NCBI GenBank assembly: GCA_002269645.1
Contig: NIVC01002892.1
Span: forward strand, 62,001 to 126,000
Length of the DNA: 64,000 nucleotides
From: Macrostomum lignano
Taxonomy: Eukaryota
Reading direction: 5' to 3'
Part shown: piece after piece, positions 23,359 through 48,950 of the stretch
Layout: every line of letters begins with the position of its first letter
Position numbering within the stretch: position 1 is the first letter of the stretch
Made by a program: the position numbers and the translations under genes
Notes under the pieces: generated by a model
What the model was told of the DNA's origin: nothing
Seen by the model: only the letters and a program-made list of their open reading frames with translations
The model's database searches: none

Positions 23359-23489
23359 CTTGTGTGCCGCCTGTCTGTTTCTGTGCCGCCTGTCTGCTTC
23401 TGTGCCGCCTGTCTGCTTCTGTGCCGCCTGTCTGCTTCTGTGCCGCCTGTCTGCTTCTGTGCCGCTTCTTCTTCTTCTGCTTCTTGTGT

Positions 23490-26173: not shown

Positions 26174-26563
26174 ACCGAAATTTTCCTGCCTACCCTTCCC
26201 ACTTTTTACAGCATAGAAAAAATATTGCCTAGACTAAAACTGGCTTTCGTGCACAAATAATGCCACTTATGTCAGTAGAGAGATTTAGCATGCACGGAAA
26301 TAGTTTGAATACAAAAACCACTAAATCATAAAAAACTAGCTTAAGAATCTGTAAAAAAATTTATGAAAATCGTTTGTGTATTACGAGCCAGTGAAACATT
26401 TAACTTAAAGTTGAATTAGTCACATTAATTGTTCGGAGATTGTTAAAAACTGCCTTTAAAATCTTCAATGCTTTTTTTAATAATTGCTTTACGAAAACGA
26501 AGGTTTCATTCAGGCTGTAGAAAATATTTCTATATAATCTAAGCTATCCCTTCTACAATCCCC

Positions 26564-26679
26564 AGCTCTGGTTTCTCTTCATTCCACGATTAAATCTTTC
26601 GCCTTTTACTAAAGATTTCCGTGGAGGGATACTTTTAGGAGAATTCTCTAGTTTTTGCAGGCCTTTCCTAGAAAGGCTT
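26564..26679 (+). ncRNA. U5: U5 spliceosomal snRNA gene, full length
   Basis: 5' CTCTGGTTTCTCTTC; stem AAATCTTT/AAAGATTT enclosing the invariant loop 1 CGCCTTTTACT (26600-26610); CCGTGGAG; Sm-like site AGTTTTTG (26650-26657); 3' hairpin GCCTTTC-CTA-GAAAGGC. Colinear with metazoan U5 as I know it; the ends are approximate. Confidence 0.92.
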
Positions 26680-26705
26680 ATTGGAAGTTGAATAGTTTAG
26701 ACTAG
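26611..26705 (+). repeat. 95-bp direct repeat DR1 = U5 3' half plus ~26 nt of downstream flank
   Basis: AAAGATTTCC...TTTAGACTAG, repeated at 33068-33161, 39519-39613, 45996-46090 and 52337-52431. Confidence 0.95.
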
Positions 26706-26897
26706 CCTAGCTTAGCTCTTGAAAGTACTTTAGTTAGCCTTCCATTCCACTGTACATTTGTTTTTATCTCTACCCCACCCCTAGTCTTATCTTGCAGTCG
26801 CCCCACCCCTCTCAGCGAGCGCACTTTGTGTGCCTCCTGACTCATTAGTTAGTTGTAGTTTAGGTTTAGTTTGAGTGTACCCAAATAATCACGCCAT

Positions 26898-29602
26898 ATG
26901 GCTGCAAATCGCGCCAGCGCTAAAAAGATGGACTGCCGGCCCTCTCTCGAGCACCGGTATCGTCCGAACGAAGCCTACGGTCGCCAGCTTCTTGGACTGA
27001 CGCCGACAGCTGAGCCATCGACTGCGAGCCCGCCGCCAGCAGGCCTGATGCGAGCTCGACGCAGTCTGGAAGGCCGCCACTCGATCAGCCCACCGGCCGG
27101 CGAGCTCTTGCGCAACGCAGAGGAGATCCTGCGAGAGAATGAGCAGCTGCCGGAGGCTGCAGGCGCAGAGGCAGAGCAGCGCATGTCTCTCGACTGCGAC
27201 GAGCCAGGCCAGACAAGCGCCCTGCCATCCAACGAGGCCGCAGCAACCACCGAGCCACCAACTGCCGAGTCCAGCGAGCTCAGTGCGGCAGCGGCAGCGC
27301 CGACGTCTGAGGAGCGCCAGCAATCGGCTGCAGACCAGGCCTCGACGCTGCCAAAGCCCCCTGCCGAGCAACTGGACGCTGACATCAGTCAAATCATCTT
27401 CCCTGATGAGCCTGACTTGACTGACTGTCAGCAGACGATCTACGCCAGCGACAGCACCATCATCTATGCGCCCAAGTTCCTGAGCGAGGTCGCGGACCAA
27501 GTCTACGAGCGCCTGATCACCGACCTGCTGCCTCAAGCCTTTCAGCATCGTCCGAGTGAGCAGCGCCGCGTCTACTGGATCGGCCCGTCGTACACCTACA
27601 GCGGGGTTGAGCTGAAGGAAAATCTAGACTGGCATCAGGTAATTGAAGACATTCGTGACTTCATTTACCATGATACCCAGTTCGATGTCCCGAAGTTCAA
27701 CTCCGTGTTGGTGAACTTCTACACCGAGCCGGGAGACCGGATTCCCTGGCACTCGGACGATGAGGATGAGCTCGGCGACAGGCCGACGATCGCGACCGTG
27801 TCCTTCGGCGCTGAGCGGCTGTTCATGCTGCGCCGTCGGGACGGCAACGTGACGCACCGCTTTCCAACGCTGCCAGGCTCGCTGATTCTGATGGCAGGAA
27901 ACTGCCAGAAACGCCTGCAGCACCAGGTGCCCGCCGCCCACTCTCAGAATGGCGTCCGCATCTCGCTAACATTCCGTGTCACCAAGCCGGAGCTGCGGCG
28001 CAAGCGGCTCTGCCGGATGACCCGACCTACAGCCAGCCGCTAAACGGCGGCCCATTCGGCGACGACCAAGGCGGTCGGGACGACGACCAAGGCGGCCACG
28101 ACGACGACCAGGGCGGCCGGGGCGACGACAGGCCCCAGGAGCGGCAGGCGACGGCGACGCGAGACCGCGAAGGCGATCGGGGTCGGCGCGGCCGTGGCGG
28201 CCACCAGCGAGGCAGGCGAGGAGGTCGCGGCGCGGCGTCCGGTGCGGCGGCGGCTTCGGCGGCTTCCTGGCCGGCCGGTGCGGCGGCGGCTTCGGCGACA
28301 AGCGCGCAGGCGGCTGCGGCAGCGCGGCCCTACGCGCAGGTTGCGGCGCGCCCTGCGCCGCCCAGAAGGCCCCAGGCTGCCATCCCGCCGATCGTTTTTG
28401 AGGTGCACCGGGACGCGGCCAACAAGCTGATGCAGTTCGTTGCCTGGCTGCAGACCAACTTTGCCGGCGAAGCTAGAGCCGTCAACACTGCGCCGATGGC
28501 GAATCAGCCGGCCTATCTCGTGTTCCCAGCGTCGGAGCGGGACTACAACGTCTTCCTGGGCGGCGCGCTGCGCGAGGAGAAGCTGCTCGAGCATCCCGTA
28601 AAGCGCCGTCCAGCCCGAGCCCGACCGCTGGACAACAGAACAGGGCCCGACAGAGTGCAGCAGCAGCCGGTACGCACCTTCGTCGCTACTGAGGTGCCCC
28701 TCGCATTCTCGGAGGCTGACTTCGCGACCCTGTTGCGCGGCACGCTCAAGCTGGACATTGTCAGCGTCCACAGAATCCGAGCCAGAGCGACTGGGAAGGC
28801 AACCCAGTTCGTGCGCATCTTCACAAAGTCGGCGATGACCTACGAGAAGTGCCTCCGCGATGGCATCTGCACCGACTTCTTGAAGTTCAACTGCGAGGAC
28901 AGCCGCACAGACGAGCCGGTCCGCGCTCTGCAATGCCAGCGCTGCCAGGAGTTCGGCCACCGCGCTGCTCAGTGTCGGGGGCAGCAGCGCTGCCGGATTT
29001 GCGGCGGCCAGCATTCCTGGAAGGAGTGCCAGCACGAGGGCCCAGCGGTCTGCGCCAACTGCGGCGGCTCGCACCGAACCACCAGTCGAGCCTGCACCGT
29101 CGCCAAGGCGGAGCACGACAAGGCGACCAGAGCGGCTGCTGAGGCCAAAGCCGCGGCGCGAGCTGCGGAAGCTGCGGCCGCTGCTGCCCCAGTGTCAAGT
29201 GAGACCGACGACGCCGCCGCCGACGACGACTCCGACAGCGGCTGGCTGATCCGCCGAGGCAGGCGCACGGTGCCGGTACCCGCCGCGATCCGGCCGCTTG
29301 TCATCGTGACCGATGATGCCAGGAGCGCTCCGGCGGCAGAGACCGAGTCTGATGTCAATGCGACTGCTCCGTCAGCTGATGCCGGCCAGGCGGTGCAGCT
29401 GCAGCTTAGTGACTTTATGTCGGTGGTGAGCATGCTGTTGCCCCTGATCACCCGCTCTCTGACTCAAGTGGTTGTGCAGGCCCTGTCCCGACCGCCTGGG
29501 GAGGTCCTCACTGTGGAATCAACCAGTAAAATGGTTGAGGACATTGTGCGGGCTGCACTCCAGGAAGTGCCGGGCATGGCTGGCATGACCACTGAGTCCT
29601 AG
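26898..29602 (+). CDS. ORF1 copy 1: AlkB (ALKBH2/3-like 2OG-Fe(II) dioxygenase) fused to a gag-like RRM/triple zinc-knuckle protein; 1-nt frameshift at ~28006
   Basis: AlkB at ~27459-27980: YTYSG, FNSVLVNFY, WHSD (H at 27750), QHQVP, RISLTFR. Knuckles CQRCQEFGHRAAQC, CRICGGQHSWKEC, CANCGGSHRTTSRAC. Copies 2-4 have CAAGCGAGCTC where this copy has CAAGCGGCTC. Confidence 0.9.
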
Positions 29603-29688
29603 TCTCAGGCAGCTAAACTCAAGACTTGAATTGAAACTTCAGTGCGTTAACTGTAGACTCAAACAATCAAACCACAGCCCTGAAGATT

Positions 29689-32469
29689 ATGCATTTAAAC
29701 TGCAGGGGATTCAACCCGAAAATCAGAGAGCTGACACAGTGGGTCGTCAGTCAGGAGCTAGACATTGCCCTCTTTTCTGAGACCATTCTCAAAAGTTGTC
29801 ACACTGTCCAGATTCCCGGGTACTCCATCATTCGGTATGATACCCCGCAAGTCAAACGCGGGCTTCTCCTTGCCCACTCTCCTCGCGTCAAACTCACAAA
29901 TGTGCGCTTGCAGTATGACAATGTCAACCATGAAGCCATCTCTTGCACCGTGAGCTTGTCTGACAACTCTGGTCCTGACTTCAATCTCGCTCTGGTGTAC
30001 AGGTCTCCAGCACCGTACCATCTGAACCTGAACCTACTCAAAAATCTTCTCTCTCGTAGGCGCAGTGTGCTCATGGGTGACCTCAATGCCAGACACCGCT
30101 TCCTCGGGGGTGACAGCAGCAACAACATGGCTGGCTACCAGCTGCACGACTGGCTGTCTGAGGGCCCCACCTCGCCCACCATTCTCAATCAAGCCGGTCA
30201 GTTCACCAGACTGGCCACCAAAAACGGGCTGATTTCTAGGAATGTCTTGGACCTCGCCCTGGCCACTGAGGACTTTCTCCCATTTGTGCAGAACTTTGAG
30301 GTGGGTCCTGACCTGGGCAGTGACCACTTACCTATAATCCTCACGCTCAATATTCAGTCGAAGAAATGGGCTGGTCCCCCCAGACCCAAAAACTTCTCAA
30401 AAACAAACTGGGACGAGTTCAGACTCAAAATCAGTGAAGCTTTGAGCTCAGATCAGAATATTAAATTATCAAATGCTGACCAAATCAATGCCGAAGTGGA
30501 TCACATCACAAAGGCCATTCACACCGTGATTGACTCCACAGTACCAGACTGTGGTGCCAAAAACGCCCTACCCAAGTACATCCTCGACCTGATCAAAGAG
30601 CGCAGACGACTCAGACGCCTCTTCTTCAGCACACGGGATCAAAATTTCAAAACCCAAGCAAACCAGCTCGCAAATCGCATAAAGAGAGAAATTAACTCCT
30701 TCCAGAATGGAAAGCTCACCAAAGTCTGTGAGAGTATTGTTGAAAACAGCAAGAACAAGAAAGTGAAGAATTTCTGGCATGACACTAAAAAGCTGATGGG
30801 CAAATTTAAGCCAACCTCGATCCCCAGCCTCACCCTGGGTCAAACAACTGCGCACACAGATCTGGAGAAGGCTAACCTTCTAGCCGAGACTCTGGACTCA
30901 AAGATGCGCCCAGTCCCTTCCACATGCGAACAGCTCAAACGTGAGGTGGCCGATGTGGCACAGCTCACCTCATTCTACCCCGTTCCTGAGGGAATCGAAC
31001 CCATCGAGACCCACCCACTTGATGCTGCATTCTCTGTGGCAGACACAGTGTGGGAACTGGAGCACCTCAGGCCTGATGGAGCACCCGGGCTGGACAAGAT
31101 TCCCAACTGCGTCCTCAAGCTGGGCTTAGAGGGGGTGGCAATCACGAGACTCACTAACCTCTTCAACGCCTGCTACGGTCGAGGGATTTTCCCCAGCGCC
31201 TGGAAGAAAGCTGTGGTGACAATGATCCCCAAGCCGGACAAACCGCCCGAACACCCCAACTCCTACAGACCAATCAGCCTGACCTCATGTCTGGGCAAAG
31301 TGTTTGAGAAGCTTATAGCAAAAAGACTCACCAAGCACCTTGAGGATAATAAGACCCTAGGAGATGACCAATGCGCCTACCGCAAAATTCACTCCACGTA
31401 TGACAACCTGTGCCGTCTGGCACAAGATGTCATGGTAGCAAAGTGCAAAGCTAAAAAGTCCGCTGCAGTCTTCCTGGATGCAGAGGCAGCTTTTGACTCC
31501 ACCTGGCACGACAAGATCAGGCATAGCATGCTCACCGATGGTTTTCCACCTATGCTCATGCGAATCCTGTCTGACTACCTGCGAGACAGACAGATCCAGG
31601 TTCGAATCGAGGGGGCCCTAAGCGATCCCCACACCATCCAGGCTGGCGTCCCTCAGGGAGGCATTCTGAGCCCTCTCCTGTACCTCCTCTTCGTCAGCTC
31701 AATGCCGACTCCCACCATCTCAAGCGTCAAACGCAGTCAATTCGCAGACGACATGGCCGTCTGGGCCTCAGCAGACACCTTTGCGGGGCTCCGAACATCC
31801 CTTCAAAGCTACCTCAGACGAGTCTTTGACTGGTGCGGTAAACAAGGCATTAGACTGAATGCCGGTAAAAGCAAAGCAATCGCTTTCAACTACAAACCCA
31901 CTAGGCGCATGGACTTGCGACCCAAACTGTATCTGGGGGACACTGAGGTTCCGTACTGTCAGGAGGTGAAATTCCTGGGTGTCCTCCTTGACCAGAGCCT
32001 CTGCCTGAACAAACATGTGGACAACATGGCAGATACCAGCAGAGCCATTGTAATGTCACTGTGCAGAATTGCAAAAATGACAAAGCTGAGTAGCACCACC
32101 CTCAGAATGCTGTACAGGGCATACGGAGAAAGCGCTCTCACCTACGGAGCGCCAATCCTGAGCCAAATCTGTGCGACTAACCAAATCAAATTGCAGAAAA
32201 TTCAAAACCTGGCTCTCCGTATCTGCTATGGTGTGCCATCCTACATCAGCATTGAATACCTGCACAAGCTGGCAGGTATGCCGATGCTCGCAGACAGGGT
32301 CAAGCAGCTGGGGGTGGCTTGGCTGCTCAAGATGAGGGCAGCCAAGCTCCACAGCTTCCACATTGAGCCGGAAGCCCCTCGGGCTCCGGGCCGAACCCCT
32401 GTCCTCAATGTCCTCTGGGATGCCATGAGGCGTCGGGAAAGAAACAGGGGATTCCCACCCCAGGGTTAG
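29689..32469 (+). CDS. ORF2 copy 1: APE endonuclease plus reverse transcriptase, intact, 926 aa, no RNase H
   Basis: APE: HLNCRG, FSET, GDLNARH, SDHLPI. RT: PGLDKIP, YRPISLTS, FLDAEAAFD, GVPQGGILSPLLY, FADD. Confidence 0.96.
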   Translation: MHLNCRGFNPKIRELTQWVVSQELDIALFSETILKSCHTVQIPGYSIIRYDTPQVKRGLLLAHSPRVKLTNVRLQYDNVNHEAISCTVSLSDNSGPDFNLALVYRSPAPYHLNLNLLKNLLSRRRSVLMGDLNARHRFLGGDSSNNMAGYQLHDWLSEGPTSPTILNQAGQFTRLATKNGLISRNVLDLALATEDFLPFVQNFEVGPDLGSDHLPIILTLNIQSKKWAGPPRPKNFSKTNWDEFRLKISEALSSDQNIKLSNADQINAEVDHITKAIHTVIDSTVPDCGAKNALPKYILDLIKERRRLRRLFFSTRDQNFKTQANQLANRIKREINSFQNGKLTKVCESIVENSKNKKVKNFWHDTKKLMGKFKPTSIPSLTLGQTTAHTDLEKANLLAETLDSKMRPVPSTCEQLKREVADVAQLTSFYPVPEGIEPIETHPLDAAFSVADTVWELEHLRPDGAPGLDKIPNCVLKLGLEGVAITRLTNLFNACYGRGIFPSAWKKAVVTMIPKPDKPPEHPNSYRPISLTSCLGKVFEKLIAKRLTKHLEDNKTLGDDQCAYRKIHSTYDNLCRLAQDVMVAKCKAKKSAAVFLDAEAAFDSTWHDKIRHSMLTDGFPPMLMRILSDYLRDRQIQVRIEGALSDPHTIQAGVPQGGILSPLLYLLFVSSMPTPTISSVKRSQFADDMAVWASADTFAGLRTSLQSYLRRVFDWCGKQGIRLNAGKSKAIAFNYKPTRRMDLRPKLYLGDTEVPYCQEVKFLGVLLDQSLCLNKHVDNMADTSRAIVMSLCRIAKMTKLSSTTLRMLYRAYGESALTYGAPILSQICATNQIKLQKIQNLALRICYGVPSYISIEYLHKLAGMPMLADRVKQLGVAWLLKMRAAKLHSFHIEPEAPRAPGRTPVLNVLWDAMRRRERNRGFPPQG

Positions 32470-33067
32470 GCTGGCTACCAGCCTTCCAAACCGGAAGTGA
32501 CCACGCTCTGAAACGCAACTAATAAAACTAAACTTGCTGCCTGAGACAGAGATCGGTTGATCAGTCATTAGGACTGATTAGGTAATCTCTATGTCTCCTC
32601 GCGTTTCTTTTTACAATTTTCCCAACTGTGTTTTTTACCCAACTGCTCTACAAATATCACTAATTGCTTTTTTACACCTTTACTATATTCATTCTATTTT
32701 TACAACTAAATTCAAATATGCGCTATTGCATTTTAATCTCTTTTTTTTACTTAAATGTCTTGCTTTTATTCTCAATAGGCCTTCAAATATCTAGCACGTA
32801 TTTTTTAGATGTCCTGTTTTTATTAGATCCCTTCTTTGTGCGGGATTTCCCTCCCCTCTTTTTTATCCCCAAATGCGTGCAAAATACTGCAAAATATTGA
32901 AAAATAGTTTTATATATGTATATTTTTAATTTCAATATTCGTATTAAATATTCAAATCGAAATCTTGTAAATATTTTTAATTCTTTCGATCAAATACAAA
33001 ATATAACTGCGGCAGAGTTCTTCGGAACTGACCCGCGCCGGTTTCGACGGCACCTCGTTTTAACAAC

Positions 33068-33161
33068 AAAGATTTCCGTGGAGGGATACTCTTAGGAGAA
33101 TTCTCTAGTTTTTGCAGGCCTTTCCTAGAAAGGCTTATTGAAGTTGAATAGTTTAGACTAG
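33068..33161 (+). repeat. DR2: orphan U5 3' half (94 bp) between copies 1 and 2
   Basis: Matches DR1 apart from one substitution and a 1-nt deletion at a site polymorphic among DRs. Confidence 0.93.
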
Positions 33162-33350
33162 CCTAGCTTAGCTCTTAAAGTACTTTAGTTAGCCTTCCAT
33201 TCCACTGTACATTTGTTTTTATCTCTACCCCACCCCTAGTCTTATCTTGCAGTCGCCCCACCCCTCTCAGCGAGCGCACTTTGTGTGCCTCCTGACTCAT
33301 TAGTTAGTTGTAGTTTAGTTTAGTTGAGTGCACCCAAATAATCACGCCAT

Positions 33351-36052
33351 ATGGCTGCAAATCGCGCCAGCGCTAAAAAGATGGACTGCCGGCCCTCTCT
33401 CGAGCACCGGTATCGTCCGAACGAAGCCTACGGTCGCCAGCTTCTTGGACTGACGCCGACAGCTGAGCCATTGACTGCGAGCCCGCCGCCAGCAGGCCAG
33501 ATGCGAGCTCGACGCAGTCTGGAAGGCCGCCACTCGATCAGCCCACCGGCCGGCGAGCTCTTGCGCAACGCAGAGGAGATCCTGCGAGAGAATGAGCAGC
33601 TGCCGGAGGCTGCAGGCGCAGAGGCAGAGCAGCGCATGTCTCTCGACTGCGACGAGCCAGGCCAGACAAGCGCCCTGCCATCCAACGAGGCCGCAGCAAC
33701 CACCGAGCCACCAACTGCCGAGTCCAGCGAGCTCAGTGCGGCAGCGGCAGCGCCGACGTCTGAGGAGCGCCAGCAATCGGCTGCAGACCAGGCCTCGACG
33801 CTGCCAAAGCCCCCTGCCGAGCAACTGGACGCTGACATCAGTCAAATCATCTTCCCTGATGAGCCTGACTTGACTGACTGTCAGCAGACGATCTACGCCA
33901 GCGACAGCACCATCATCTATGCGCCCAAGTTCCTGAGCGAGGTCGCGGACCAAGTCTACGAGCGCCTGATCACCGACCTGCTGCCTCTGCCTTTCAGCAT
34001 CGTCCGAGTGAGCAGCGCCGCGTCTACTGGATCGGCCCGTCGTACACCTACAGCGGGGTTGAGCTGAAGGAAAATCTAACTGGCATCAGGTAATTGAAGA
34101 CATTCGTGACTTCATTTACCATGATACCCAGTTCGATGTCCCGAAGTTCAACTCCGTGTTGGTGAACTTCTACACCGAGCCGGGAGACCGGATTCCCTGG
34201 CACTCGGACGATGAGGATGAGCTCGGCGACAGGCCGACGATCGCGACCGTGTCCTTCGGCGCTGAGCGGCTGTTCATGCTGCGCCGTCGGGACGGCAACG
34301 TGACGCACCGCTTTCCAACGCTGCCAGGCTCGCTGATTCTGATGGCAGGAAACTGCCAGAAACGCCTGCAGCACCAGGTGCCCGCCGCCCACTCTCAGAA
34401 TGGCGTCCGCATCTCGCTAACATTCCGTGTCACCAAGCCGGAGCTGCGGCGCAAGCGAGCTCTGCCGGATGACCCGACCTACAGCCAGCCGCTAAACGGC
34501 GGCCCATTCGGCGACGACCAAGGCGGTCGGGACGACGACCAAGGCGGCCACGACGACGACCAGGGCGGCCGGGGCGACGACAGGCCCCAGGAGCGGCAGG
34601 CGACGGCGACGCGAGACCGCGAAGGCGATCGGGGTCGGCGCGGCCGTGGCGGCCACCAGCGAGGCAGGCGAGGAGGTCGCGGCGCGGCGTCCGGTGCGGC
34701 GGCGGCTTCGGCGGCTTCCTGGCCGGCCGGTGCGGCGGCGGCTTCGGCGACAAGCGCGCAGGCGGCTGCGGCAGCGCGGCCCTACGCGCAGGTTGCGGCG
34801 CGCCCTGCGCCGCCCAGAAGGCCCCAGGCTGCCATCCCGCCGATCGTTTTTGAGGTGCACCGGGACGCGGCCAACAAGCTGATGCAGTTCGTTGCCTGGC
34901 TGCAGACCAACTTTGCCGGCGAAGCTAGAGCCGTCAACACTGCGCCGATGGCGAATCAGCCGGCCTATCTCGTGTTCCCAGCGTCGGAGCGGGACTACAA
35001 CGTCTTCCTGGGCGGCGCGCTGCGCGAGGAGAAGCTGCTCGAGCATCCCGTAAAGCGCCGTCCAGCCCGAGCCCGACCGCTGGACAACAGAACAGGGCCC
35101 GACAGAGTGCAGCAGCAGCCGGTACGCACCTTCGTCGCTACTGAGGTGCCCCTCGCATTCTCGGAGGCTGACTTCGCGACCCTGTTGCGCGCACGCTCAA
35201 GCTGGACATTGTCAGCGTCCACAGAATCCGAGCCAGAGCGACTGGGAAGGCAACCCAGTTCGTGCGCATCTTCACAAAGTCGGCGATGACCTACGAGAAG
35301 TGCCTCCGCGATGGCATCTGCACCGACTTCTTGAAGTTCAACTGCGAGGACAGCCGCACAGACGAGCCGGTCCGCGCTCTGCAATGCCAGCGCTGCCAGG
35401 AGTTCGGCCACCGCGCTGCCAGTGTCGGGGGCAGCAGCGCTGCCGGATTTGCGGCGGCCAGCATTCCTGGAAGGAGTGCCAGCACGAGGGCCCAGCGGTC
35501 TGCGCCAACTGCGGCGGCTCGCACCGAACCACCAGTCGAGCCTGCACCGTCGCCAAGGCGGAGCACGACAAGGCGACCAGAGCGGCTGCTGAGGCCAAAG
35601 CCGCGGCGCGAGCTGCGGAAGCTGCGGCCGCTGCTGCCCCAGTGTCAAGTGAGACCGACGACGCCGCCGCCGACGACGACTCCGACAGCGGCTGGCTGAT
35701 CCGCCGAGGCAGGCGCACGGTGCCGGTACCCGCCGCGATCCGGCCGCTTGTCATCGTGACCGATGATGCCAGGAGCGCTCCGGCGGCAGAGACCGAGTCT
35801 GATGTCAATGCGACTGCTCCGTCAGCTGATGCCGGCCAGGCGGTGCAGCTGCAGCTTAGTGACTTTATGTCGGTGGTGAGCATGCTGTTGCCCCTGATCA
35901 CCCGCTCTCTGACTCAAGTGGTTGTGCAGGCCCTGTCCCGACCGCCTGGGGAGGTCCTCACTGTGGAATCAACCAGTAAAATGGTTGAGGACATTGTGCG
36001 GGCTGCACTCCAGGAAGTGCCGGGCATGGCTGGCATGACCACTGAGTCCTAG
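33351..36052 (+). pseudogene. ORF1 copy 2 (AlkB-gag) with 1-nt deletions at ~33989, ~34078, ~35191 and ~35420
   Basis: Same motifs as copy 1, split over several ORF pieces; the shifts may be assembly errors. Confidence 0.85.
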
Positions 36053-36138
36053 TCTCAGGCAGCTAAACTCAAGACTTGAATTGAAACTTCAGTGCGTTAA
36101 CTGTAGACTCAAACAATCAAACCACAGCCCTGAAGATT

Positions 36139-38918
36139 ATGCATTTAAACTGCAGGGGATTCAACCCGAAAATCAGAGAGCTGACACAGTGGGTCGTCAG
36201 TCAGGAGCTAGACATTGCCCTCTTTTCTGAGACCATTCTCAAAAGTTGTCACACTGTCCAGATTCCCGGGTACTCCATCATTCGGTATGATACCCCGCAA
36301 GTCAAACGCGGGCTTCTCCTTGCCCACTCTCCTCGCGTCAAACTCACAAATGTGCGCTTGCAGTATGACAATGTCAACCATGAAGCCATCTCTTGCACCG
36401 TGAGCTTGTCTGACAACTCTGGTCCTGACTTCAATCTCGCTCTGGTGTACAGGTCTCCAGCACCGTACCATCTGAACCTGAACCTACTCAAAAATCTTCT
36501 CTCTCGTAGGCGCAGTGTGCTCATGGGTGACCTCAATGCCAGACACCGCTTCCTCGGGGGTGACAGCAGCAACAACATGGCTGGCTACCAGCTGCACGAC
36601 TGGCTGTCTGAGGGCCCCACCTCGCCCACCATTCTCAATCAAGCCGGTCAGTTCACCAGACTGGCCACCAAAAACGGGCTGATTTCTAGGAATGTCTTGG
36701 ACCTCGCCCTGGCCACTGAGGACTTTCTCCCATTTGTGCAGACTTTGAGGTGGGTCCTGACCTGGGCAGTGACCACTTACCTATAATCCTCACGCTCAAT
36801 ATTCAGTCGAAGAAATGGGCTGGTCCCCCCAGACCCAAAAACTTCTCAAAAACAAACTGGGACGAGTTCAGACTCAAAATCAGTGAAGCTTTGAGCTCAG
36901 ATCAGAATATTAAATTATCAAATGCTGACCAAATCAATGCCGAAGTGGATCACATCACAAAGGCCATTCACACCGTGATTGACTCCACAGTACCAGACTG
37001 TGGTGCCAAAAACGCCCTACCCAAGTACATCCTCGACCTGATCAAAGAGCGCAGACGACTCAGACGCCTCTTCTTCAGCACACGGGATCAAAATTTCAAA
37101 ACCCAAGCAAACCAGCTCGCAAATCGCATAAAGAGAGAAATTAACTCCTTCCAGAATGGAAAGCTCACCAAAGTCTGTGAGAGTATTGTTGAAAACAGCA
37201 AGAACAAGAAAGTGAAGAATTTCTGGCATGACACTAAAAAGCTGATGGGCAAATTTAAGCCAACCTCGATCCCCAGCCTCACCCTGGGTCAAACAACTGC
37301 GCACACAGATCTGGAGAAGGCTAACCTTCTAGCCGAGACTCTGGACTCAAAGATGCGCCCAGTCCCTTCCACATGCGAACAGCTCAAACGTGAGGTGGCC
37401 GATGTGGCACAGCTCACCTCATTCTACCCCGTTCCTGAGGGAATCGAACCCATCGAGACCCACCCACTTGATGCTGCATTCTCTGTGGCAGACACAGTGT
37501 GGGAACTGGAGCACCTCAGGCCTGATGGAGCACCCGGGCTGGACAAGATTCCCAACTGCGTCCTCAAGCTGGGCTTAGAGGGGGTGGCAATCACGAGACT
37601 CACTAACCTCTTCAACGCCTGCTACGGTCGAGGGATTTTCCCCAGCGCCTGGAAGAAAGCTGTGGTGACAATGATCCCCAAGCCGGACAAACCGCCCGAA
37701 CACCCCAACTCCTACAGACCAATCAGCCTGACCTCATGTCTGGGCAAAGTGTTTGAGAAGCTTATAGCAAAAAGACTCACCAAGCACCTTGAGGATAATA
37801 AGACCCTAGGAGATGACCAATGCGCCTACCGCAAAATTCACTCCACGTATGACAACCTGTGCCGTCTGGCACAAGATGTCATGGTAGCAAAGTGCAAAGC
37901 TAAAAAGTCCGCTGCAGTCTTCCTGGATGCAGAGGCAGCTTTTGACTCCACCTGGCACGACAAGATCAGGCATAGCATGCTCACCGATGGTTTTCCACCT
38001 ATGCTCATGCGAATCCTGTCTGACTACCTGCGAGACAGACAGATCCAGGTTCGAATCGAGGGGGCCCTAAGCGATCCCCACACCATCCAGGCTGGCGTCC
38101 CTCAGGGAGGCATTCTGAGCCCTCTCCTGTACCTCCTCTTCGTCAGCTCAATGCCGACTCCCACCATCTCAAGCGTCAAACGCAGTCAATTCGCAGACGA
38201 CATGGCCGTCTGGGCCTCAGCAGACACCTTTGCGGGGCTCCGAACATCCCTTCAAAGCTACCTCAGACGAGTCTTTGACTGGTGCGGTAAACAAGGCATT
38301 AGACTGAATGCCGGTAAAAGCAAAGCAATCGCTTTCAACTACAAACCCACTAGGCGCATGGACTTGCGACCCAAACTGTATCTGGGGGACACTGAGGTTC
38401 CGTACTGTCAGGAGGTGAAATTCCTGGGTGTCCTCCTTGACCAGAGCCTCTGCCTGAACAAACATGTGGACAACATGGCAGATACCAGCAGAGCCATTGT
38501 AATGTCACTGTGCAGAATTGCAAAAATGACTAAGCTGAGTAGCACCACCCTCAGAATGCTGTACAGGGCATACGGAGAAAGCGCTCTCACCTACGGAGCG
38601 CCAATCCTGAGCCAAATCTGTGCGACTAACCAAATCAAATTGCAGAAAATTCAAAACCTGGCTCTCCGTATCTGCTATGGTGTGCCATCCTACATCAGCA
38701 TTGAATACCTGCACAAGCTGGCAGGTATGCCGATGCTCGCAGACAGGGTCAAGCAGCTGGGGGTGGCTTGGCTGCTCAAGATGAGGGCAGCCAAGCTCCA
38801 CAGCTTCCACATTGAGCCGGAAGCCCCTCGGGCTCCGGGCCGAACCCCTGTCCTCAATGTCCTCTGGGATGCCATGAGGCGTCGGGAAAGAAACAGGGGA
38901 TTCCCACCCCAGGGTTAG
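36139..38918 (+). pseudogene. ORF2 copy 2 (APE-RT) with a 1-nt deletion at ~36741
   Basis: ORF pieces 36139-36786 and 36750-38918 join to give the copy 1 protein. Confidence 0.88.
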
Positions 38919-39518
38919 GCTGGCTACCAGCCTTCCAAACCGGAAGTGACCACGCTCTGAAACGCAACTAATAAAACTAAACTTGCTGCCTGAGACAGAG
39001 ATCGGTTGATCAGTCATTAGGACTGATTAGGTAATCTCTATGTCTCCTCGCGTTTCTTTTTACAATTTTCCCAACTGTGTTTTTTACCCAACTGCTCTAC
39101 AAATATCACTAATTGCTTTTTTACACCTTTACTATATTCATTCTATTTTTACAACTAAATTCAAATATGCGCTATTGCATTTTTAATCTCTATTTTTTTA
39201 CTTAAATGTCTTGCTTTTACTCTCAATAGGCCTTCAAATATCTAGCACGTATTTTTTAGATGTCCTGTTTTTATTAGATCCCTTCTTTGTGCGGGATTTC
39301 CCTCCCCTCTTTTTTATCCCCAAATGCGTGCAAAATACTGCAAAATATTGAAAAATAGTTTTATATATGTATATTTTTAATTTCAATATTCGTATTAAAT
39401 ATTCAAATCGAAATCTTGTAAATATTTTTAATTCTTTCGATCAAATACAAAATATAACTGCGGCAGAGTTCTTCGGAACTGACCCGCGCCGGTTTCGACG
39501 GCACCTCGTTTTAACAAC

Positions 39519-39613
39519 AAAGATTTCCGTGGAGGGATACTCTTAGGAGAATTCTCTAGTTTTTGCAGGCCTTTCCTAGAAAGGCTTATTAGAAGTTGAA
39601 TAGTTTAGACTAG
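39519..39613 (+). repeat. DR3: orphan U5 3' half (95 bp)
   Basis: Direct match to DR1 and DR5. Confidence 0.93.
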
Positions 39614-39804
39614 CCTAGCTTAGCTCTTAAAGTACTTTAGTTAGCCTTCCATTCCACTGTACATTTGTTTTTATCTCTACCCCACCCCTAGTCTTATCTT
39701 GCAGTCGCCCCACCCCTCTCAGCGAGCGCACTTTGTGTGCCTCCTGACTCATTAGTAGTTGTCTAGTTTAGTTTAGTGTGAGTGCACCCAAATAATCACG
39801 CCAT

Positions 39805-42527
39805 ATGGCTGCAAATCGCGCCAGCGCTAAAAAGATGGACTGCCGGCCCTCTCTCGAGCACCGGTATCGTCCGAACGAAGCCTACGGTCGCCAGCTTCTT
39901 GGACTGACGCCGACAGCTGAGCCATTGACTGCGAGCCCGCCGCCAGCAGGCCAGATGCGAGCTCGACGCAGTCTGGAAGGCCGCCACTCGATCAGCCCAC
40001 CGGCCGGCGAGCTCTTGCGCAACGCAGAGGAGATCCTGCGAGAGAATGAGCAGCTGCCGGAGGCTGCAGGCGCAGAGGCAGAGCAGCGCATGTCTCTCGA
40101 CTGCGACGAGCCAGGCCAGACAAGCGCCCTGCCATCCAACGAGGCCGCAGCAACCACCGAGCCACCAACTGCCGAGTCCAGCGAGCTCAGTGCGGCAGCG
40201 GCAGCGCCGACGTCTGAGGAGCGCCAGCAATCGGCTGCAGACCAGGCCTCGACGCTGCCAAAGCCCCCTGCCGAGCAACTGGACGCTGACATCAGTCAAA
40301 TCATCTTCCCTGATGAGCCTGACTTGACTGACTGTCAGCAGACGATCTACGCCAGCGACAGCACCATCATCTATGCGCCCAAGTTCCTGAGCGAGGTCGC
40401 GGACCAAGTCTACGAGCGCCTGATCACCGACCTGCTGCCTCTGCCTTTCAGCATCGTCCGAGTGAGCAGCGCCGCGTCTACTGGATCGGCCCGTCGTACA
40501 CCTACAGCGGGGTTGAGCTGAAGGAAAATCTAGACTGGCATCAGGTAATTGAAGACATTCGTGACTTCATTTACCATGATACCCAGTTCGATGTCCCGAA
40601 GTTCAACTCCGTGTTGGTGAACTTCTACACCGAGCCGGGAGACCGGATTCCCTGGCACTCGGACGATGAGGATGAGCTCGGCGACAGGCCGACGATCGCG
40701 ACCGTGTCCTTCGGCGCTGAGCGGCTGTTCATGCTGCGCCGTCGGGACGGCAACGTGACGCACCGCTTTCCAACGCTGCCAGGCTCGCTGATTCTGATGG
40801 CAGGAAACTGCCAGAAACGCCTGCAGCACCAGGTGCCCGCCGCCCACTCTCAGAATGGCGTCCGCATCTCGCTAACATTCCGTGTCACCAAGCCGGAGCT
40901 GCGGCGCAAGCGAGCTCTGCCGGATGACCCGACCTACAGCCAGCCGCTAAACGGCGGCCCATTCGGCGACGACCAAGGCGGTCGGGACGACGACCAAGGC
41001 GGCCACGACGACGACCAGGGCGGCCGGGGCGACGACAGGCCCCAGGAGCGGCAGGCGACGGCGACGCGAGACCGCGAAGGCGATCGGGGTCGGCGCGGCC
41101 GTGGCGGCCACCAGCGAGGCAGGCGAGGAGGTCGCGGCGCGGCGTCCGGTGCGGCGGCGGCTTCGGCGGCTTCCTGGCCGGCCGGTGCGGCGGCGGCTTC
41201 GGCGACAAGCGCGCAGGCGGCTGCGGCAGCGCGGCCCTACGCGCAGGTTGCGGCGCGCCCTGCGCCGCCCAGAAGGCCCCAGGCTGCCATCCCGCCGATC
41301 GTTTTTGAGGTGCACCGGGACGCGGCCAACAAGCTGATGCAGTTCGTTGCCTGGCTGCAGACCAACTTTGCCGGCGAAGCTCGAGCCGTCAACACTGCGC
41401 CGATGGCGAATCAGCCGGCCTATCTCGTGTTCCCAGCGTCGGAGCGGGACTACAACGTCTTCCTGGGCGGCGCGCTGCGCGAGGAGAAGCTGCTCGAGCA
41501 TCCCGTAAAGCGCCGTCCAGCCCGAGCCCGACCGCTGGACAACAGAACAGGGCCCGACAGAGTGCAGCAGCAGCCGGTACGCACCTTCGTCGCTACTGAG
41601 GTGCCCCTCGCATTCTCGGAGGCTGACTTCGCGACCCTGTTGCGCGACACGCTCAAGCTGGACATTGTCAGCGTCCACAGAATCCGAGCCAGAGCGACTG
41701 GGAAGGCAACCCAGTTCGTGCGCATCTTCACAAAGTCGGCGATGACCTACGAGAAGTGCCTCCGCGATGGCATCTGCACCGACTTCTTGAAGTTCAACTG
41801 CGAGGACAGCCGCACAGACGAGCCGGTCCGCGCTCTGCAATGCCAGCGCTGCCAGGAGTTCGGCCACCGCGCTGCCCAGTGTCGGGGGCAGCAGCGCTGC
41901 CGGATTTGCGGCGGCCAGCATTCCTGGAAGGAGTGCCAGCACGAGGGCCCAGCGGTCTGCGCCAACTGCGGCGGCTCGCACCGAACCACCAGTCGAGCCT
42001 GCACCGTCGCCAAGGCGGAGCACGACAAGGCGACCAGAGCGGCTGCTGAGGCCAAAGCCGCGGCGCGAGCTGCGGAAGCTGCGGCCGCTGCTGCCCCAGT
42101 GTCAAGTGAGACCGACGACGCCGCCGCCGACGACGACTCCGACAGCGGCTGGCTGATCCGCCGAGGCAGGCGCACGGTGCCGGTACCCGCCGCGATCCGG
42201 CCGCTTGTCATCGTGACCGATGATGCCAGGAGCGCTCCGGCGGCAGAGACCGAGTCTGCAGCAGCTGCCAGCGCTGATGTCAATGCGACTGCTCCGTCAG
42301 CTGATGCCGGCCAGGCGGTGCAGCTGCAGCTTAGTGACTTTATGTCGGTGGTGAGCATGCTGTTGCCCCTGATCACCCGCTCTCTGACTCAAGTGGTTGT
42401 GCAGGCCCTGTCCCGACCGCCTGGGGAGGTCCTCACTGTGGAATCAACCAGTAAAATGGTTGAGGACATTGTGCGGGCTGCACTCCAGGAAGTGCCGGGC
42501 ATGGCTGGCATGACCACTGAGTCCTAG
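39805..42527 (+). CDS. ORF1 copy 3 (AlkB-gag, 907 aa if the single 1-nt deletion at ~40443 is corrected)
   Basis: ORF 40611-42527 runs unbroken from the AlkB catalytic core through all three zinc knuckles, which proves the fusion. Confidence 0.88.
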
Positions 42528-42613
42528 TCTCAGGCAGCTAAACTCAAGACTTGAATTGAAACTTCAGTGCGTTAACTGTAGACTCAAACAATCAAACCAC
42601 AGCCCTGAAGATT

Positions 42614-45393
42614 ATGCATTTAAACTGCAGGGGATTCAACCCGAAAATCAGAGAGCTGACACAGTGGGTCGTCAGTCAGGAGCTAGACATTGCCCTCTTC
42701 TCTGAGACCATTCTCAAAAGTTGTCACACTGTCCAGATTCCCGGGTACTCCATCATTCGGTATGATACCCCGCAAGTCAAACGCGGGCTTCTCCTTGCCC
42801 ACTCTCCTCGCGTCAAACTCACAAATGTGCGCTTGCAGTATGACAATGTCAACCATGAAGCCATCTCTTGCACCGTGAGCTTGTCTGACAACTCTGGTCC
42901 TGACTTCAATCTCGCTCTGGTGTACAGGTCTCCAGCACCGTACCATCTGAACCTGAACCTACTCAAAAATCTTCTCTCCGTAGGCGCAGTGTGCTCATGG
43001 GTGACCTCAATGCCAGACACCGCTTCCTCGGGGGTGACAGCAGCAACAACATGGCTGGCTACCAGCTGCACGACTGGCTGTCTGAGGGCCCCACCTCGCC
43101 CACCATTCTCAATCAAGCCGGTCAGTTCACCAGACTGGCCACCAAAAACGGGCTGATTTCTAGGAATGTCTTGGACCTCGCCCTGGCCACTGAGGACTTT
43201 CTCCCATTTGTGCAGGACTTTGAGGTGGGTCCTGACCTGGGCAGTGACCACTTACCTATAATCCTCACGCTCAATATTCAGTCGAAGAAATGGGCTGGTC
43301 CCCCCAGACCCAAAAACTTCTCAAAAACAAACTGGGACGAGTTCAGACTCAAAATCAGTGAAGCTTTGAGCTCAGATCAGAATATTAAATTATCAAATGC
43401 TGACCAAATCAATGCCGAAGTGGATCACATCACAAAGGCCATTCACACCGTGATTGACTCCACAGTACCAGACTGTGGTGCCAAAAACGCCCTACCCAAG
43501 TACATCCTCGACCTGATCAAAGAGCGCAGACGACTCAGACGCCTCTTCTTCAGCACACGGGATCAAAATTTCAAAACCCAAGCAAACCAGCTCGCAAATC
43601 GCATAAAGAGAGAAATTAACTCCTTCCAGAATGGAAAGCTCACCAAAGTCTGTGAGAGTATTGTTGAAAACAGCAAGAACAAGAAAGTGAAGAATTTCTG
43701 GCATGACACTAAAAAGCTGATGGGCAAATTTAAGCCAACCTCGATCCCCAGCCTCACCCTGGGTCAAACAACTGCGCACACAGATCTGGAGAAGGCTAAC
43801 CTTCTAGCCGAGACTCTGGACTCAAAGATGCGCCCAGTCCCTTCCACATGCGAACAGCTCAAACGTGAGGTGGCCGATGTGGCACAGCTCACCTCATTCT
43901 ACCCCGTTCCTGAGGGAATCGAACCCATCGAGACCCACCCACTTGATGCTGCATTCTCTGTGGCAGACACAGTGTGGGAACTGGAGCACCTCAGGCCTGA
44001 TGGAGCACCCGGGCTGGACAAGATTCCCAACTGCGTCCTCAAGCTGGGCTTAGAGGGGGTGGCAATCACGAGACTCACTAACCTCTTCAACGCCTGCTAC
44101 GGTCGAGGGATTTTCCCCAGCGCCTGGAAGAAAGCTGTGGTGACAATGATCCCCAAGCCGGACAAACCGCCCGAACACCCCAACTCCTACAGACCAATCA
44201 GCCTGACCTCATGTCTGGGCAAAGTGTTTGAGAAGCTTATAGCAAAAAGACTCACCAAGCACCTTGAGGATAATAAGACCCTAGGAGATGACCAATGCGC
44301 CTACCGCAAAATTCACTCCACGTATGACAACCTGTGCCGTCTGGCACAAGATGTCATGGTAGCAAAGTGCAAAGCTAAAAAGTCCGCTGCAGTCTTCCTG
44401 GATGCAGAGGCAGCTTTTGACTCCACCTGGCACGACAAGATCAGGCATAGCATGCTCACCGATGGTTTTCCACCTATGCTCATGCGAATCCTGTCTGACT
44501 ACCTGCGAGACAGACAGATCCAGGTTCGAATCGAGGGGGCCCTAAGCGATCCCCACACCATCCAGGCTGGCGTCCCTCAGGGAGGCATTCTGAGCCCTCT
44601 CCTGTACCTCCTCTTCGTCAGCTCAATGCCGACTCCCACCATCTCAAGCGTCAAACGCAGTCAATTCGCAGACGACATGGCCGTCTGGGCCTCAGCAGAC
44701 ACCTTTGCGGGGCTCCGAACATCCCTTCAAAGCTACCTCAGACGAGTCTTTGACTGGTGCGGTAAACAAGGCATTAGACTGAATGCCGGTAAAAGCAAAG
44801 CAATCGCTTTCAACTACAAACCCACTAGGCGCATGGACTTGCGACCCAAACTGTATCTGGGGGACACTGAGGTTCCGTACTGTCAGGAGGTGAAATTCCT
44901 GGGTGTCCTCCTTGACCAGAGCCTCTGCCTGAACAAACATGTGGACAACATGGCAGATACCAGCAGAGCCATTGTAATGTCACTGTGCAGAATTGCAAAA
45001 ATGACTAAGCTGAGTAGCACCACCCTCAGAATGCTGTACAGGGCATACGGAGAAAGCGCTCTCACCTACGGAGCGCCAATCCTGAGCCAAATCTGTGCGA
45101 CTAACCAAATCAAATTGCAGAAAATTCAAAACCTGGCTCTCCGTATCTGCTATGGTGTGCCATCCTACATCAGCATTGAATACCTGCACAAGCTGGCAGG
45201 TATGCCGATGCTCGCAGACAGGGTCAAGCAGCTGGGGGTGGCTTGGCTGCTCAAGATGAGGGCAGCCAAGCTCCACAGCTTCCACATTGAGCCGGAAGCC
45301 CCTCGGGCTCCGGGCCGAACCCCTGTCCTCAATGTCCTCTGGGATGCCATGAGGCGTCGGGAAAGAAACAGGGGATTCCCACCCCAGGGTTAG
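42614..45393 (+). pseudogene. ORF2 copy 3 (APE-RT) with a 1-nt deletion at ~42978
   Basis: ORF pieces 42614-43156 and 42991-45393. Confidence 0.88.
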
Positions 45394-45995
45394 GCTGGCT
45401 ACCAGCCTTCCAAACCGGAAGTGACCACGCTCTGAAACGCAACTAATAAAACTAAACTTGCTGCCTGAGACAGAGATCGGTTGATCAGTCATTAGGACTG
45501 ATTAGGTAATCTCTATGTCTCCTCGCGTTTCTTTTTACAATTTTCCCAACTGTGTTTTTTACCCAACTGCTCTACAAATATCACTAATTGCTTTTTTACA
45601 CCTTTACTATATTCATTCTATTTTTACAACTAAATTCAAATATGCGCTATTGCATTTTTAATCTCTATTTTTTTTTACTTAAATGTCTTGCTTTTACTCT
45701 CAATAGGCCTTCAAATATCAAGCACGTATTTTTTAGATGTCCTGTTTTTATTAGATCCCTTCTTTGTGTGGGATTTCCCTCCCCTCTTTTTTATCCCCAA
45801 ATGCGTGCAAAATACTGCAAAATATTGAAAAATAGTTTTATATATGTATATTTTTAATTTCAATATTCGTATTAAATATTCAAATCGAAATCTTGTAAAT
45901 ATTTTTAATTCTTTCGATCAAATACAAAATATAACTGCGGCAGAGTTCTTCGGAACTGACCCGCGCCGGTTTCGACGGCACCTCGTTTTAACAAC

Positions 45996-46090
45996 AAAGA
46001 TTTCCGTGGAGGGATACTCTTAAGAGAATTCTCTAGTTTTTGCAGGCCTTTCCTAGAAAGGCTTATTAGAAGTTGAATAGTTTAGACTAG
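45996..46090 (+). repeat. DR4: orphan U5 3' half (95 bp)
   Basis: Direct match, with a G>A variant at 46023. Confidence 0.93.
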
Positions 46091-46173
46091 CCTAGCTTAG
46101 CTCTTAAAAGTACTTTAGTTAGCCTTCCATTCCACTGTACATTTGTTTTTATCTCTACCCCACCCCTAGTCTT

Positions 46174-48864: not shown

Positions 48865-48950
48865 TCTCAGGCAGCTAAACTCAAGACTTGAATTGAAACT
48901 TCAGTGCGTTAACTGTAGACTCAAACAATCAAACCACAGCCCTGAAGATT

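What the first reader, a model, noticed from the sequence alone, without database searches (positions are those of the whole stretch)
26611..26705. The insertion preserves, or rebuilds, the host U5 gene through a 95-bp duplication
The duplicated block holds everything downstream of loop 1 (Sm site, 3' hairpin, putative 3'-end signal), so a complete U5 remains upstream of the array. 95 bp is very long for a target-site duplication. DR1 differs from DR3-5 at 26634 (T vs C) and 26683 (G vs A), and copy 1 has other private variants. That fits the U5 3' half travelling as the element's own 5' end, for example through read-through from the U5 promoter. The element would then deliver a variant 3' half to the host snRNA and borrow its promoter. 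This is inference.
Basis: partly seen in the sequence, partly recalled or inferred. Interest (0 to 1): 0.85.

Follow-up and report, generated by a model that had tools for sequence, protein, structure and literature searches.

The report
LINE that rebuilds its U5 target
A flatworm jumping gene (LINE) inserts only into U5 spliceosomal RNA genes and carries its own copy of the U5 back half, so each full-length insertion rebuilds the gene it splits, with the element's version of that half.

Summary
The window (Macrostomum lignano, NIVC01002892.1) has U5(1-48) | [95-nt block + 6.4-kb LINE] x4 | 95-nt block | flank, and a complete U5 (Rfam 83.8 bits) lies upstream.

Two other U5 loci of the same genome show that the 95 nt are not a target-site duplication.
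- In L005, the native sequence downstream of the array is a different, more canonical U5 3' half. It shares only 14-16 nt (AAAGATTTCCGTGG[AG]) with the block.
- In L006, a 5'-truncated copy has only a 14-nt duplication and destroys U5.

So the true duplication is 14 bp. The other ~81 nt (U5 nt 63-116 plus a 27-nt 3' flank) are the element's own 5' leader.

Leader variants co-segregate with element-body variants across loci. All seven substitution sites in the leader fall in the U5 internal loop or the 3' spacer.

Read-through from the U5 promoter remains untested.

Arrays grow by re-insertion into the rebuilt gene, as in R1 tandem arrays.

I found no published LINE that rebuilds its target gene. 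Separately, ORF1 carries a conserved ALKBH3-like AlkB domain.

The parts
26485..26539 (+). Candidate U5 promoter: a conserved block TGCTTTAYGAAAACGAAKGTTTMATTMARGC (26485-26515) and a TATA-like CTAnATAA (26530-26539)
   Evidence: These are the only upstream stretches conserved (~80%) among the three U5 loci (window, L005, L006). Sequence further upstream differs. Function is inferred.
26563..26678 (+). Complete U5 snRNA gene: 5' part native (to 26624), 3' part identical in type to the element's leader
   Evidence: Rfam RF00020, 83.8 bits, model positions 1-117.
26611..26624 (+). True target-site duplication AAAGATTTCCGTGG. Bottom-strand nick inferred at 26610/26611 (in the loop 1 coding region), top-strand nick at 26624/26625
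   Evidence: This is the only part of the block duplicated at the 5'-truncated copy in L006 and shared with the native B-type half in L005. It is invariant in all 9 blocks.
26625..26705 (+). Element-borne 5' leader of unit 1: U5 nt 63-116 (stem I 3' strand, internal loop, Sm site, 3' hairpin) plus a 27-nt U5 3' flank with an invariant 3'-box-like end GAATAGTTTAGACTAG
   Evidence: The leader sits 5' of every 5'-complete copy at three loci, including B-type loci where the native half differs. Its variants are linked to body variants.
26706..33067 (+). LINE unit 1 body: 5'UTR 26706-26897; ORF1 26898-29602 (one 1-nt deletion near 28006); ORF2 29689-32469, intact, 926 aa; 3'UTR ending in (AAC)2
   Evidence: Pfam hits are AlkB (PF13532), APE (PF14529/PF03372) and RT (PF00078). 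ORF1 has three CCHC knuckles.
33068..39518 (+). Unit 2: 14-nt TSD + leader + LINE
   Evidence: 99.9% identical to unit 1.
39519..45995 (+). Unit 3: 14-nt TSD + leader + LINE
   Evidence: It has an 18-nt in-frame insertion shared with unit 4.
45996..52336 (+). Unit 4, the oldest: leader + LINE with a 143-bp deletion that removes the end of the 5'UTR and the ORF1 start; (AAC)3 tail
   Evidence: 0.8-0.9% diverged from units 1-3, with 34 private substitutions.
52337..52431 (+). Terminal block: most likely the resident (native, A-type) U5 3' half and flank displaced by the first insertion
   Evidence: It lies where L005 has its native B-type half and is identical to the leader of unit 3. Native status is not proven, because no empty allele was available.

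Best explanation
This is a young, probably active, U5-snRNA-gene-specific non-LTR retrotransposon (LINE with APE + RT) of Macrostomum lignano.

Its endonuclease nicks the bottom strand of a U5 gene inside the loop 1 coding sequence (TTTTACT|AAAGATTT), and reverse transcription is primed there. The top strand is cut 14 bp downstream, which gives a 14-bp target-site duplication.

The full-length RNA begins with a leader that is itself a U5 3' half (nt 63-116) plus 27 nt of U5 3' flank. The leader joins seamlessly to native U5 nt 62. Each full-length insertion therefore recreates a complete U5 gene (native promoter and 5' half, element-supplied 3' half and 3'-end signal). The original 3' half is pushed downstream.

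The rebuilt gene is again a target, so elements pile up head to tail, with the newest next to the U5 5' half. The 95-nt repeats in the window are these leaders (each preceded by the 14-nt duplication) plus the resident 3' half, which is of the same type.

Shown: the anatomy, the 14-bp duplication, the leader as part of the element, replacement of a different native half (L005), and loss of U5 when the copy is 5'-truncated (L006).

Inferred: the nick positions; homology-guided 5' joining that needs an RNA extending upstream of nt 63, most simply a read-through transcript from the U5 promoter; and that the rebuilt U5 is functional.
For: - Three U5 loci with different flanks carry the element at the same site. 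Window versus L005/L006 flanks are ~80% identical only in promoter blocks, and L005 versus L006 flanks differ at 2.9% of sites.
- Element bodies differ by only 0.06-1.2%. 3' tails vary: (AAC)1, (AAC)2, (AAC)3, and (AAC)2+AAA. Variation among copies is mostly synonymous, with pN/pS 0.22 for ORF1 and 0.10 for ORF2. These points indicate separate retrotransposition events from selected masters.
- L005: the rebuilt U5 scores 83.5 bits with an A-type half. The native half after the last element is B type and shares only 14-16 nt with the block.
- L006: the 5'-truncated copy has a 14-nt duplication plus ~6 extra nt, and U5 is reduced to Rfam model positions 14-63.
- Leader variants are linked to body variants across loci. 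L5b and L6f share 2 leader and 6 body substitutions. W1 and L5a share leader G73 and 5'UTR G112.
- All 7 leader substitution sites lie in the 6-nt internal loop or the 11-nt spacer; none lie in stems, Sm site, hairpin or the last 16 nt (chance about 6e-6).
- Precedents come from Stage & Eickbush 2009 (PMC2718515): R1 tandem arrays are made by re-insertion into the duplicated target, and precise full-length versus variable truncated junctions are explained by target sequence at the RNA 5' end.
Against: - Only three loci could be reached, and there is only one 5'-truncated copy and only one locus with a non-A native half.
- L005 and L006 are paralogous loci, so the sharing between L5b and L6f could partly reflect gene conversion.
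- No empty allele and no RNA data were available, so the transcription start and the use of the U5 promoter are untested.
- An snRNA-type promoter with a 3' box would be expected to end most transcripts before the LINE.
- The assembly is long-read based with many 1-nt deletions, so single-base indel variants are unreliable.
- The leader is more variable than the body (7/95 versus 102/6405 sites, p=0.001). Simple inheritance with the element does not fully explain this.
- Relatives in other species (L001-L003, L007-L009) show no U5 at all.
Confidence: 0.8

Rival explanations
1. The block is a genuine 95-bp target-site duplication. The endonuclease cuts the two strands 95 bp apart, and arrays arise by re-insertion, as for R9 elements with their exceptionally long duplication.
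For: In the window alone, every element is flanked by the same 95 nt. Very long duplications are reported for R9 (Gladyshev & Arkhipova 2009, cited in PMC5035012).
Against: In L005 the two flanks of the array share only 14-16 nt. The rest of the upstream block is A type and the downstream native sequence is B type. The truncated copy in L006 has a 14-nt duplication. Different block variants coexist within one locus and are shared between loci.
Confidence: 0.04
2. One chance insertion of a non-specific LINE into a U5 gene was amplified in place by unequal crossing-over between the repeats and spread to other loci by segmental duplication or ectopic recombination. There is no site specificity and no leader.
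For: Units 1-3 differ by only 4-14 substitutions. 95-nt repeats are good substrates for unequal exchange. Relatives in other species are not in U5 genes. M. lignano has large recent duplications (general knowledge).
Against: The flanks of the three loci differ far more than the elements do: 2.9% and ~20% versus at most 1.2%. 3' tail lengths differ between copies. Differences among copies are mainly synonymous. One copy is 5'-truncated with its own 14-nt duplication. The right junction in L005 would need recombination within 14-16 nt. Some unequal exchange within the window array cannot be excluded.
Confidence: 0.08
3. The leader is not inherited. It is re-acquired at each event, when reverse transcriptase jumps from the 5' end of the LINE RNA onto a 3'-extended pre-U5 RNA. 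This would resemble U6-L1 chimeras or the snRNA heads of SINEU.
For: Template switching onto snRNAs is documented for LINE machinery (Kojima 2015, PMC4494074). The leader ends 27 nt past the mature U5 3' end, near a 3'-box-like motif. The leader is more variable than the body. This may well be how the leader first arose.
Against: The leader-to-body junction GACTAG|CCTAGC is identical in all 8 copies. Leader variants are linked to body variants. A-type leaders occur in B-type loci.
Confidence: 0.06

Closest known systems
R1 elements of arthropod 28S rRNA genes (APE-type, site-specific)
   Same: R1 has strict site specificity, a 14-bp target-site duplication, and tandem arrays at the canonical site made by re-insertion into the duplicated target. 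Its full-length copies have precise 5' junctions, attributed to target sequence at the RNA 5' end, whereas truncated copies have variable junctions (PMC2718515). ORF1 has three CCHC knuckles.
   Different: R1 disrupts the 28S gene and carries no functional part of it. Here ~81 nt of target-gene sequence plus a 3'-end signal are a heritable part of the element and restore the gene. The target is U5, not rDNA. Membership of the R1 clade was not established.
R2 elements (co-transcription with 28S rRNA, 5' processing)
   Same: R2 depends on the target gene's promoter, and upstream target sequence in the RNA helps 5' joining (discussed in PMC4494074; PMC2718515).
   Different: R2 has a restriction-like endonuclease, a single ORF and a ribozyme, and it inactivates the rRNA unit. 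Co-transcription is not shown here.
snRNA-gene-targeting transposons: Keno and Utopia (U2), Dada-U1 and Dada-U6, and an unnamed Tx1-clade family marked 'U5' in Kojima 2015, Fig. 3
   Same: They make sequence-specific insertions into low-copy spliceosomal RNA genes (PMC4640811; PMC4494074).
   Different: In 2015 the reported list for snRNA genes held only U1, U2 and U6 targets. U5 appears only as a figure label for a Tx1 family. This element lacks the ORF2 C-terminal Cys-His motif of L1/Tx1-type elements. None of the papers I read describes rebuilding of the target gene.
Bacterial integrative elements and phages at tRNA/tmRNA genes
   Same: The mobile element carries a copy of the 3' part of the target RNA gene, so integration regenerates an intact gene with an element-derived 3' end (established knowledge, not tested here).
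   Different: Those are DNA elements that use site-specific recombinases in prokaryotes. This is a retrotransposon that uses target-primed reverse transcription in an animal.
5' transduction and snRNA-LINE chimeras (SVA/L1 5' transduction, U6-L1 chimeras, SINEU heads)
   Same: Upstream or snRNA-derived sequence becomes the 5' end of a retrotransposed copy (PMC4494074).
   Different: Those are sporadic or non-autonomous and do not reconstitute a gene at a specific target.

Membership tests
APE-type non-LTR retrotransposon (LINE) | ORF2 with an apurinic-endonuclease-like domain followed by reverse transcriptase | tested here: met
   PF14529 (E 2e-11), PF03372 and PF00078 (E 1.6e-36) hit the 926-aa ORF at 29689-32469. 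The RT region matches L1 ORF2p and R2 structures.
APE-type non-LTR retrotransposon (LINE) | Hallmarks of target-primed reverse transcription: fixed 3' junction with a variable short tail, target-site duplication, 5'-truncated copies | tested here: met
   The (AAC)1-3 tails always abut AAAGATTTCC. A 14-nt duplication and a 5'-truncated copy occur in L006.
Sequence-specific (target-specific) LINE | Independent insertions at the same nucleotide of the same target in different loci | tested here: met
   Three U5 loci with different flanks hold 9 copies, all at U5 nt 48/49. Only three loci were reachable, and no non-U5 copy was seen.
Tx1 clade (includes Keno and the Repbase 'U5' family) | RT phylogeny within Tx1 | not testable with these tools
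   No reference LINE library was available. The endonuclease domain is equally distant from TRAS1 EN and an L1 EN variant (E 0.004 each).
Tx1 clade (includes Keno and the Repbase 'U5' family) | L1/Tx1-type ORF2 with a C-terminal Cys-His motif | tested here: not met
   No CCHC-like motif was found in ORF2. Three CCHC knuckles lie in ORF1 instead. That this motif defines the clade rests on my own knowledge.
Long-TSD elements (R9 type) | The whole repeated block is native target sequence on both sides of the insertion | tested here: not met
   L005: A-type block upstream and B-type native half downstream, with only 14-16 nt shared.
Target co-transcribed elements (R2, melanogaster-type R1) | The element RNA starts in upstream target sequence and uses the target gene's promoter | not testable with these tools
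   Support is indirect only: 8 of 8 seamless junctions for leader-bearing copies against a messy junction for the truncated copy.
U5 spliceosomal snRNA gene (the rebuilt copy) | Full-length match to the U5 covariance model, with loop 1, Sm site and 3' hairpin | tested here: met
   83.8 bits in the window and 83.5 bits in the L005 chimera, against a gathering score of 40. Expression and function were not tested.
AlkB family 2OG-Fe(II) dioxygenase (ORF1 domain) | HxD...H iron triad and the RxxxxxR 2-oxoglutarate motif | tested here: met
   PF13532, E 8e-22. The alignment to human ALKBH3 (E 3.6e-23) conserves WHSDDE, QHxVP and RxSLTFR.

The most novel reading that the evidence does not exclude
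The element is transcribed from the U5 promoter as a U5-LINE fusion RNA. It uses the U5 part (Sm site, possibly snRNP-type cap and import) both to reach the nucleus and to anneal to its target. By overwriting the 3' half of every U5 gene it enters, it drives its own U5 variant through the host's U5 gene family. Part of the flatworm's spliceosomal U5 would then be retrotransposon-encoded. The strong splice-acceptor-like site in the 5'UTR would let the same transcript be trans-spliced into a translatable mRNA.
Probability: 0.25. Interest if true: 0.9.

Novelty: new variant of a known kind. Interest (0 to 1): 0.74.

Why it matters
Site-specific LINEs are thought to survive by hitting redundant genes and tolerating the damage. 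This one appears to avoid the damage: it carries the part of the gene it displaces, as phages and integrative elements do at bacterial tRNA genes. I found no published LINE that does this.

That would explain how an element can live in a low-copy essential snRNA gene family, a niche that Kojima & Jurka called a poor survival strategy.

It also means a transposon can rewrite the sequence of a spliceosomal RNA gene; L005 shows a B-type half replaced by an A-type half.

It gives a natural example of gene-preserving, site-specific retrotransposon insertion, of the kind now sought for R2-based gene delivery.

The questions are directly testable with existing M. lignano genome and RNA data.

Tried and rejected
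- Repeat finder on the whole window: swamped by satellites, so I used BLAST instead.
- Exact-protein look-ups of ORF2 and of the Helitron protein: not on record.
- Word-indexed protein searches with ORF1: returned only the window's own clusters, probably because low-complexity linkers saturated the candidate list. They did reveal the source genome through cluster members.
- Close and distant relatives in other species (L001-L003, L007-L009): no U5 by Rfam or by motif. U5 targeting could therefore not be generalised, and most of those contigs probably end inside the element.
- Test for homology between the window's flank beyond the block and the L005 native flank: not above shuffles. Whether the terminal block is native stays open.
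- Clade assignment from solved endonuclease structures: uninformative.
- Minimum-free-energy folding of the A-type, chimeric and reconstructed B-type U5: not informative, and my B reconstruction was off by one base, so I did not use it.
- 3'-transduction reading (the U5 part carried at the element's 3' end): rejected, because in L005 the A-type blocks sit 5' of each element and the last element abuts native sequence directly.

Full report
**Observation.** Rfam finds a single complete U5 snRNA gene at 26563-26678 on the + strand (83.8 bits). The block 26611-26705 covers U5 nt 49-116 (counted from 26563) plus 27 nt of 3' flank. It recurs at 33068, 39519, 45996 and 52337 at 97-98% identity. The layout is U5(1-48) | [block + 6.4-kb element] x4 | block | unrelated flank.

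**The element.** Each unit holds two reading frames.
- ORF1 is 901 aa in the majority reading. It has a disordered N-terminus, an AlkB-type 2OG-Fe(II) dioxygenase domain and three CCHC knuckles.
- ORF2 is 926 aa, with an AP-endonuclease-like domain and a reverse transcriptase. It has no RNase H and no C-terminal Cys-His motif.
- The 3' end is ...CGTTTTAAC(AAC)n.

This is an APE-type LINE. In the six full-length copies, every frame break is a 1-nt indel (all but one a deletion) or, in unit 4, the 143-bp deletion at the ORF1 start. None of the six has a stop codon created by substitution. Differences among copies are mostly synonymous, with pN/pS 0.22 for ORF1 and 0.10 for ORF2. The family is therefore young, and its copies descend from masters under selection. 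Many of the frameshifts are probably long-read assembly errors.

**Source and other loci.** Cluster look-up identified the source as Macrostomum lignano, assembly GCA_002269645.1, contig NIVC01002892.1. Two further loci of the same genome were fetched, L005 and L006. Both are U5 genes carrying the same element at the same nucleotide.

The flanks show these are separate loci. The window's flank matches L005 and L006 only in two promoter-proximal blocks, at ~80% identity. The L005 and L006 flanks differ at 2.9% of sites. The elements themselves differ by only 0.06-1.2%, and their 3' tails vary: (AAC)1, (AAC)2, (AAC)3 and (AAC)2+AAA. These are separate insertion events into the same site, so the element is U5-specific as far as three loci can show.

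**What the 95 nt are.**
- *L005.* The array ends ...AACAAC|AAAGATTTCCGTGGAG|AGGAACATTCAATGAGTGTTCCCTGATTTGTGAAACCCCTTCCAAGAAGGGGTAC.... This is a U5 3' half of a different, more canonical type (B). The rebuilt U5 upstream (83.5 bits) carries the A-type half seen in the window. Only 14-16 nt are duplicated native sequence.
- *L006.* The copy next to the U5 5' half is 5'-truncated to its last ~575 nt. It follows U5 nt 1-62 directly, with a 14-nt duplication (AAAGATTTCCGTGG) and about six extra nucleotides. U5 there is reduced to a fragment.

The true target-site duplication is therefore 14 bp. The remaining ~81 nt of the block are part of the full-length element: a 5' leader made of U5 nt 63-116 plus 27 nt of U5 3' flank.

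L005 also excludes a 3'-transduction reading. Its A-type blocks equal the number of elements and sit 5' of each one, and the last element abuts native sequence directly.

**The leader is inherited with the element.**
- L5b and L6f share two leader substitutions and six body substitutions.
- W1 and L5a, which sit in unrelated flanks, share leader G73 (window 26683) and the adjacent 5'UTR G.
- The junction GACTAG|CCTAGC is identical in all eight leader-bearing copies.
- All seven substitution sites in the leader fall in the 6-nt internal loop of U5 (four sites) or in the 11-nt spacer after the U5 3' end (three sites).
- None falls in the stem, the Sm site, the 3' hairpin or the last 16 nt. The chance of that placement is about 6e-6.

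The leader evolves like a working U5 3' half with its 3'-end signal.

**Mechanism.**
- *Shown:* the site, the 14-bp duplication, the leader, rebuilding of U5 by full-length copies, and destruction of U5 by a truncated copy.
- *Inferred:* bottom-strand nick at 26610/26611 and top-strand nick at 26624/26625.
- *Inferred:* the 5' end is joined by annealing of U5-complementary cDNA to the native top strand. This needs an RNA extending upstream of nt 63, most simply a read-through transcript from the U5 promoter of an already rebuilt gene.

Stage & Eickbush used the same reasoning for R1, where full-length junctions are precise and truncated ones are variable. They also showed that R1 tandem arrays arise by re-insertion into the duplicated target (PMC2718515).

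In the window, the most diverged and damaged unit (unit 4) lies farthest from the U5 5' half, as that model predicts. The terminal block 52337-52431 lies where L005 has its native half. It is most simply the window's resident A-type half. I could not prove this.

**Comparison with known systems.**
- Keno and Utopia (U2) and Dada-U1 and Dada-U6 were the only snRNA-gene-targeting transposons listed in 2015 (PMC4640811).
- A Tx1-clade family with a U5 target appears only as a figure label (PMC4494074).
- Mutsu disrupts its 5S rRNA target (PMC5340908).
- R9 makes a truly long duplication (reference seen).
- I found no description of a LINE that carries part of its target gene and restores it, and nothing on this element in M. 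lignano.
- The nearest functional analogue is the regeneration of tRNA genes by bacterial integrative elements (established knowledge).

The clade of this LINE is unresolved. Relatives in other species show no U5 association.

**Verdict.** Promoter borrowing remains a hypothesis. I rate this a new variant of a known kind, with high interest.

Noticed in passing
window 27375-27998 (unit 1); the same region in units 2-4; L001 2-330; L007 1752-4283: ORF1 of this LINE contains an ALKBH3-like AlkB dioxygenase domain with the HxD...H and RxxxxxR motifs intact. The domain is 66% identical in a relative whose ORF2 is 56% identical and whose gag-like region is 48% identical. At least four further 50%-identity clusters combine AlkB with the gag-like region. 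One of them (L007) sits in a complete element with an APE+RT ORF2. AlkB is reported in orchid Ty3/Gypsy elements (PMC9289625), but my search found no report for LINEs.
   Followed up: partly
window 26760-26797 (5'UTR of unit 1; the same in units 2-3): A long pyrimidine tract ends in TTATCTTGCAG and looks like a strong 3' splice acceptor about 100 nt upstream of the ORF1 ATG. In a species with spliced-leader trans-splicing, it could turn a read-through transcript into a capped mRNA. The 143-bp deletion in unit 4 starts exactly here.
   Followed up: no
window 33056-33067 versus 26600-26610: The element's 3' end CGTTTTAACAAC resembles the U5 sequence just upstream of the nick (CGCCTTTTACT). Internal junctions therefore partly recreate the loop 1 target. 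This could be chance or could help re-targeting.
   Followed up: no
window 26611-26705 and the equivalent blocks in L005 and L006: The leader has about five times more variable sites than the element body (7/95 versus 102/6405, Fisher p=0.001). Four of its six internal-loop positions vary. This is more than simple co-inheritance predicts and is unexplained; possible causes are a mutational hot spot or exchange with host U5 genes.
   Followed up: partly
window 59516-63910 (-): An uninterrupted 1464-aa Helitron Rep/helicase ORF (Helitron_like_N, PIF1, DUF6570), possibly from an intact Helitron.
   Followed up: partly
window 1-5038, 5752-6510, 9435-10404, 11145-13697, 14795-16390, 17144-17963, 20040-25984, 53451-59502: The U5 locus is embedded in a dense mosaic of unrelated satellite arrays, with periods of 15-66 bp and lengths up to 6 kb. 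A degraded RT fragment lies at 8706-9149 (-).
   Followed up: no
L005 2169 and 3371-3377; window ~46172: Unit L5a has internal deletions of ~1.8 kb and ~0.18 kb. Window unit 4 lacks 143 bp across the ORF1 start. Old copies decay by deletion, while substitutions remain few.
   Followed up: partly
window 26485-26539; L005 1043-1100; L006 8978-9035: The three U5 genes share a ~30-nt upstream block and a TATA-like CTAnATAA at about -35, while the surrounding sequence differs. These are candidate flatworm snRNA promoter elements.
   Followed up: no
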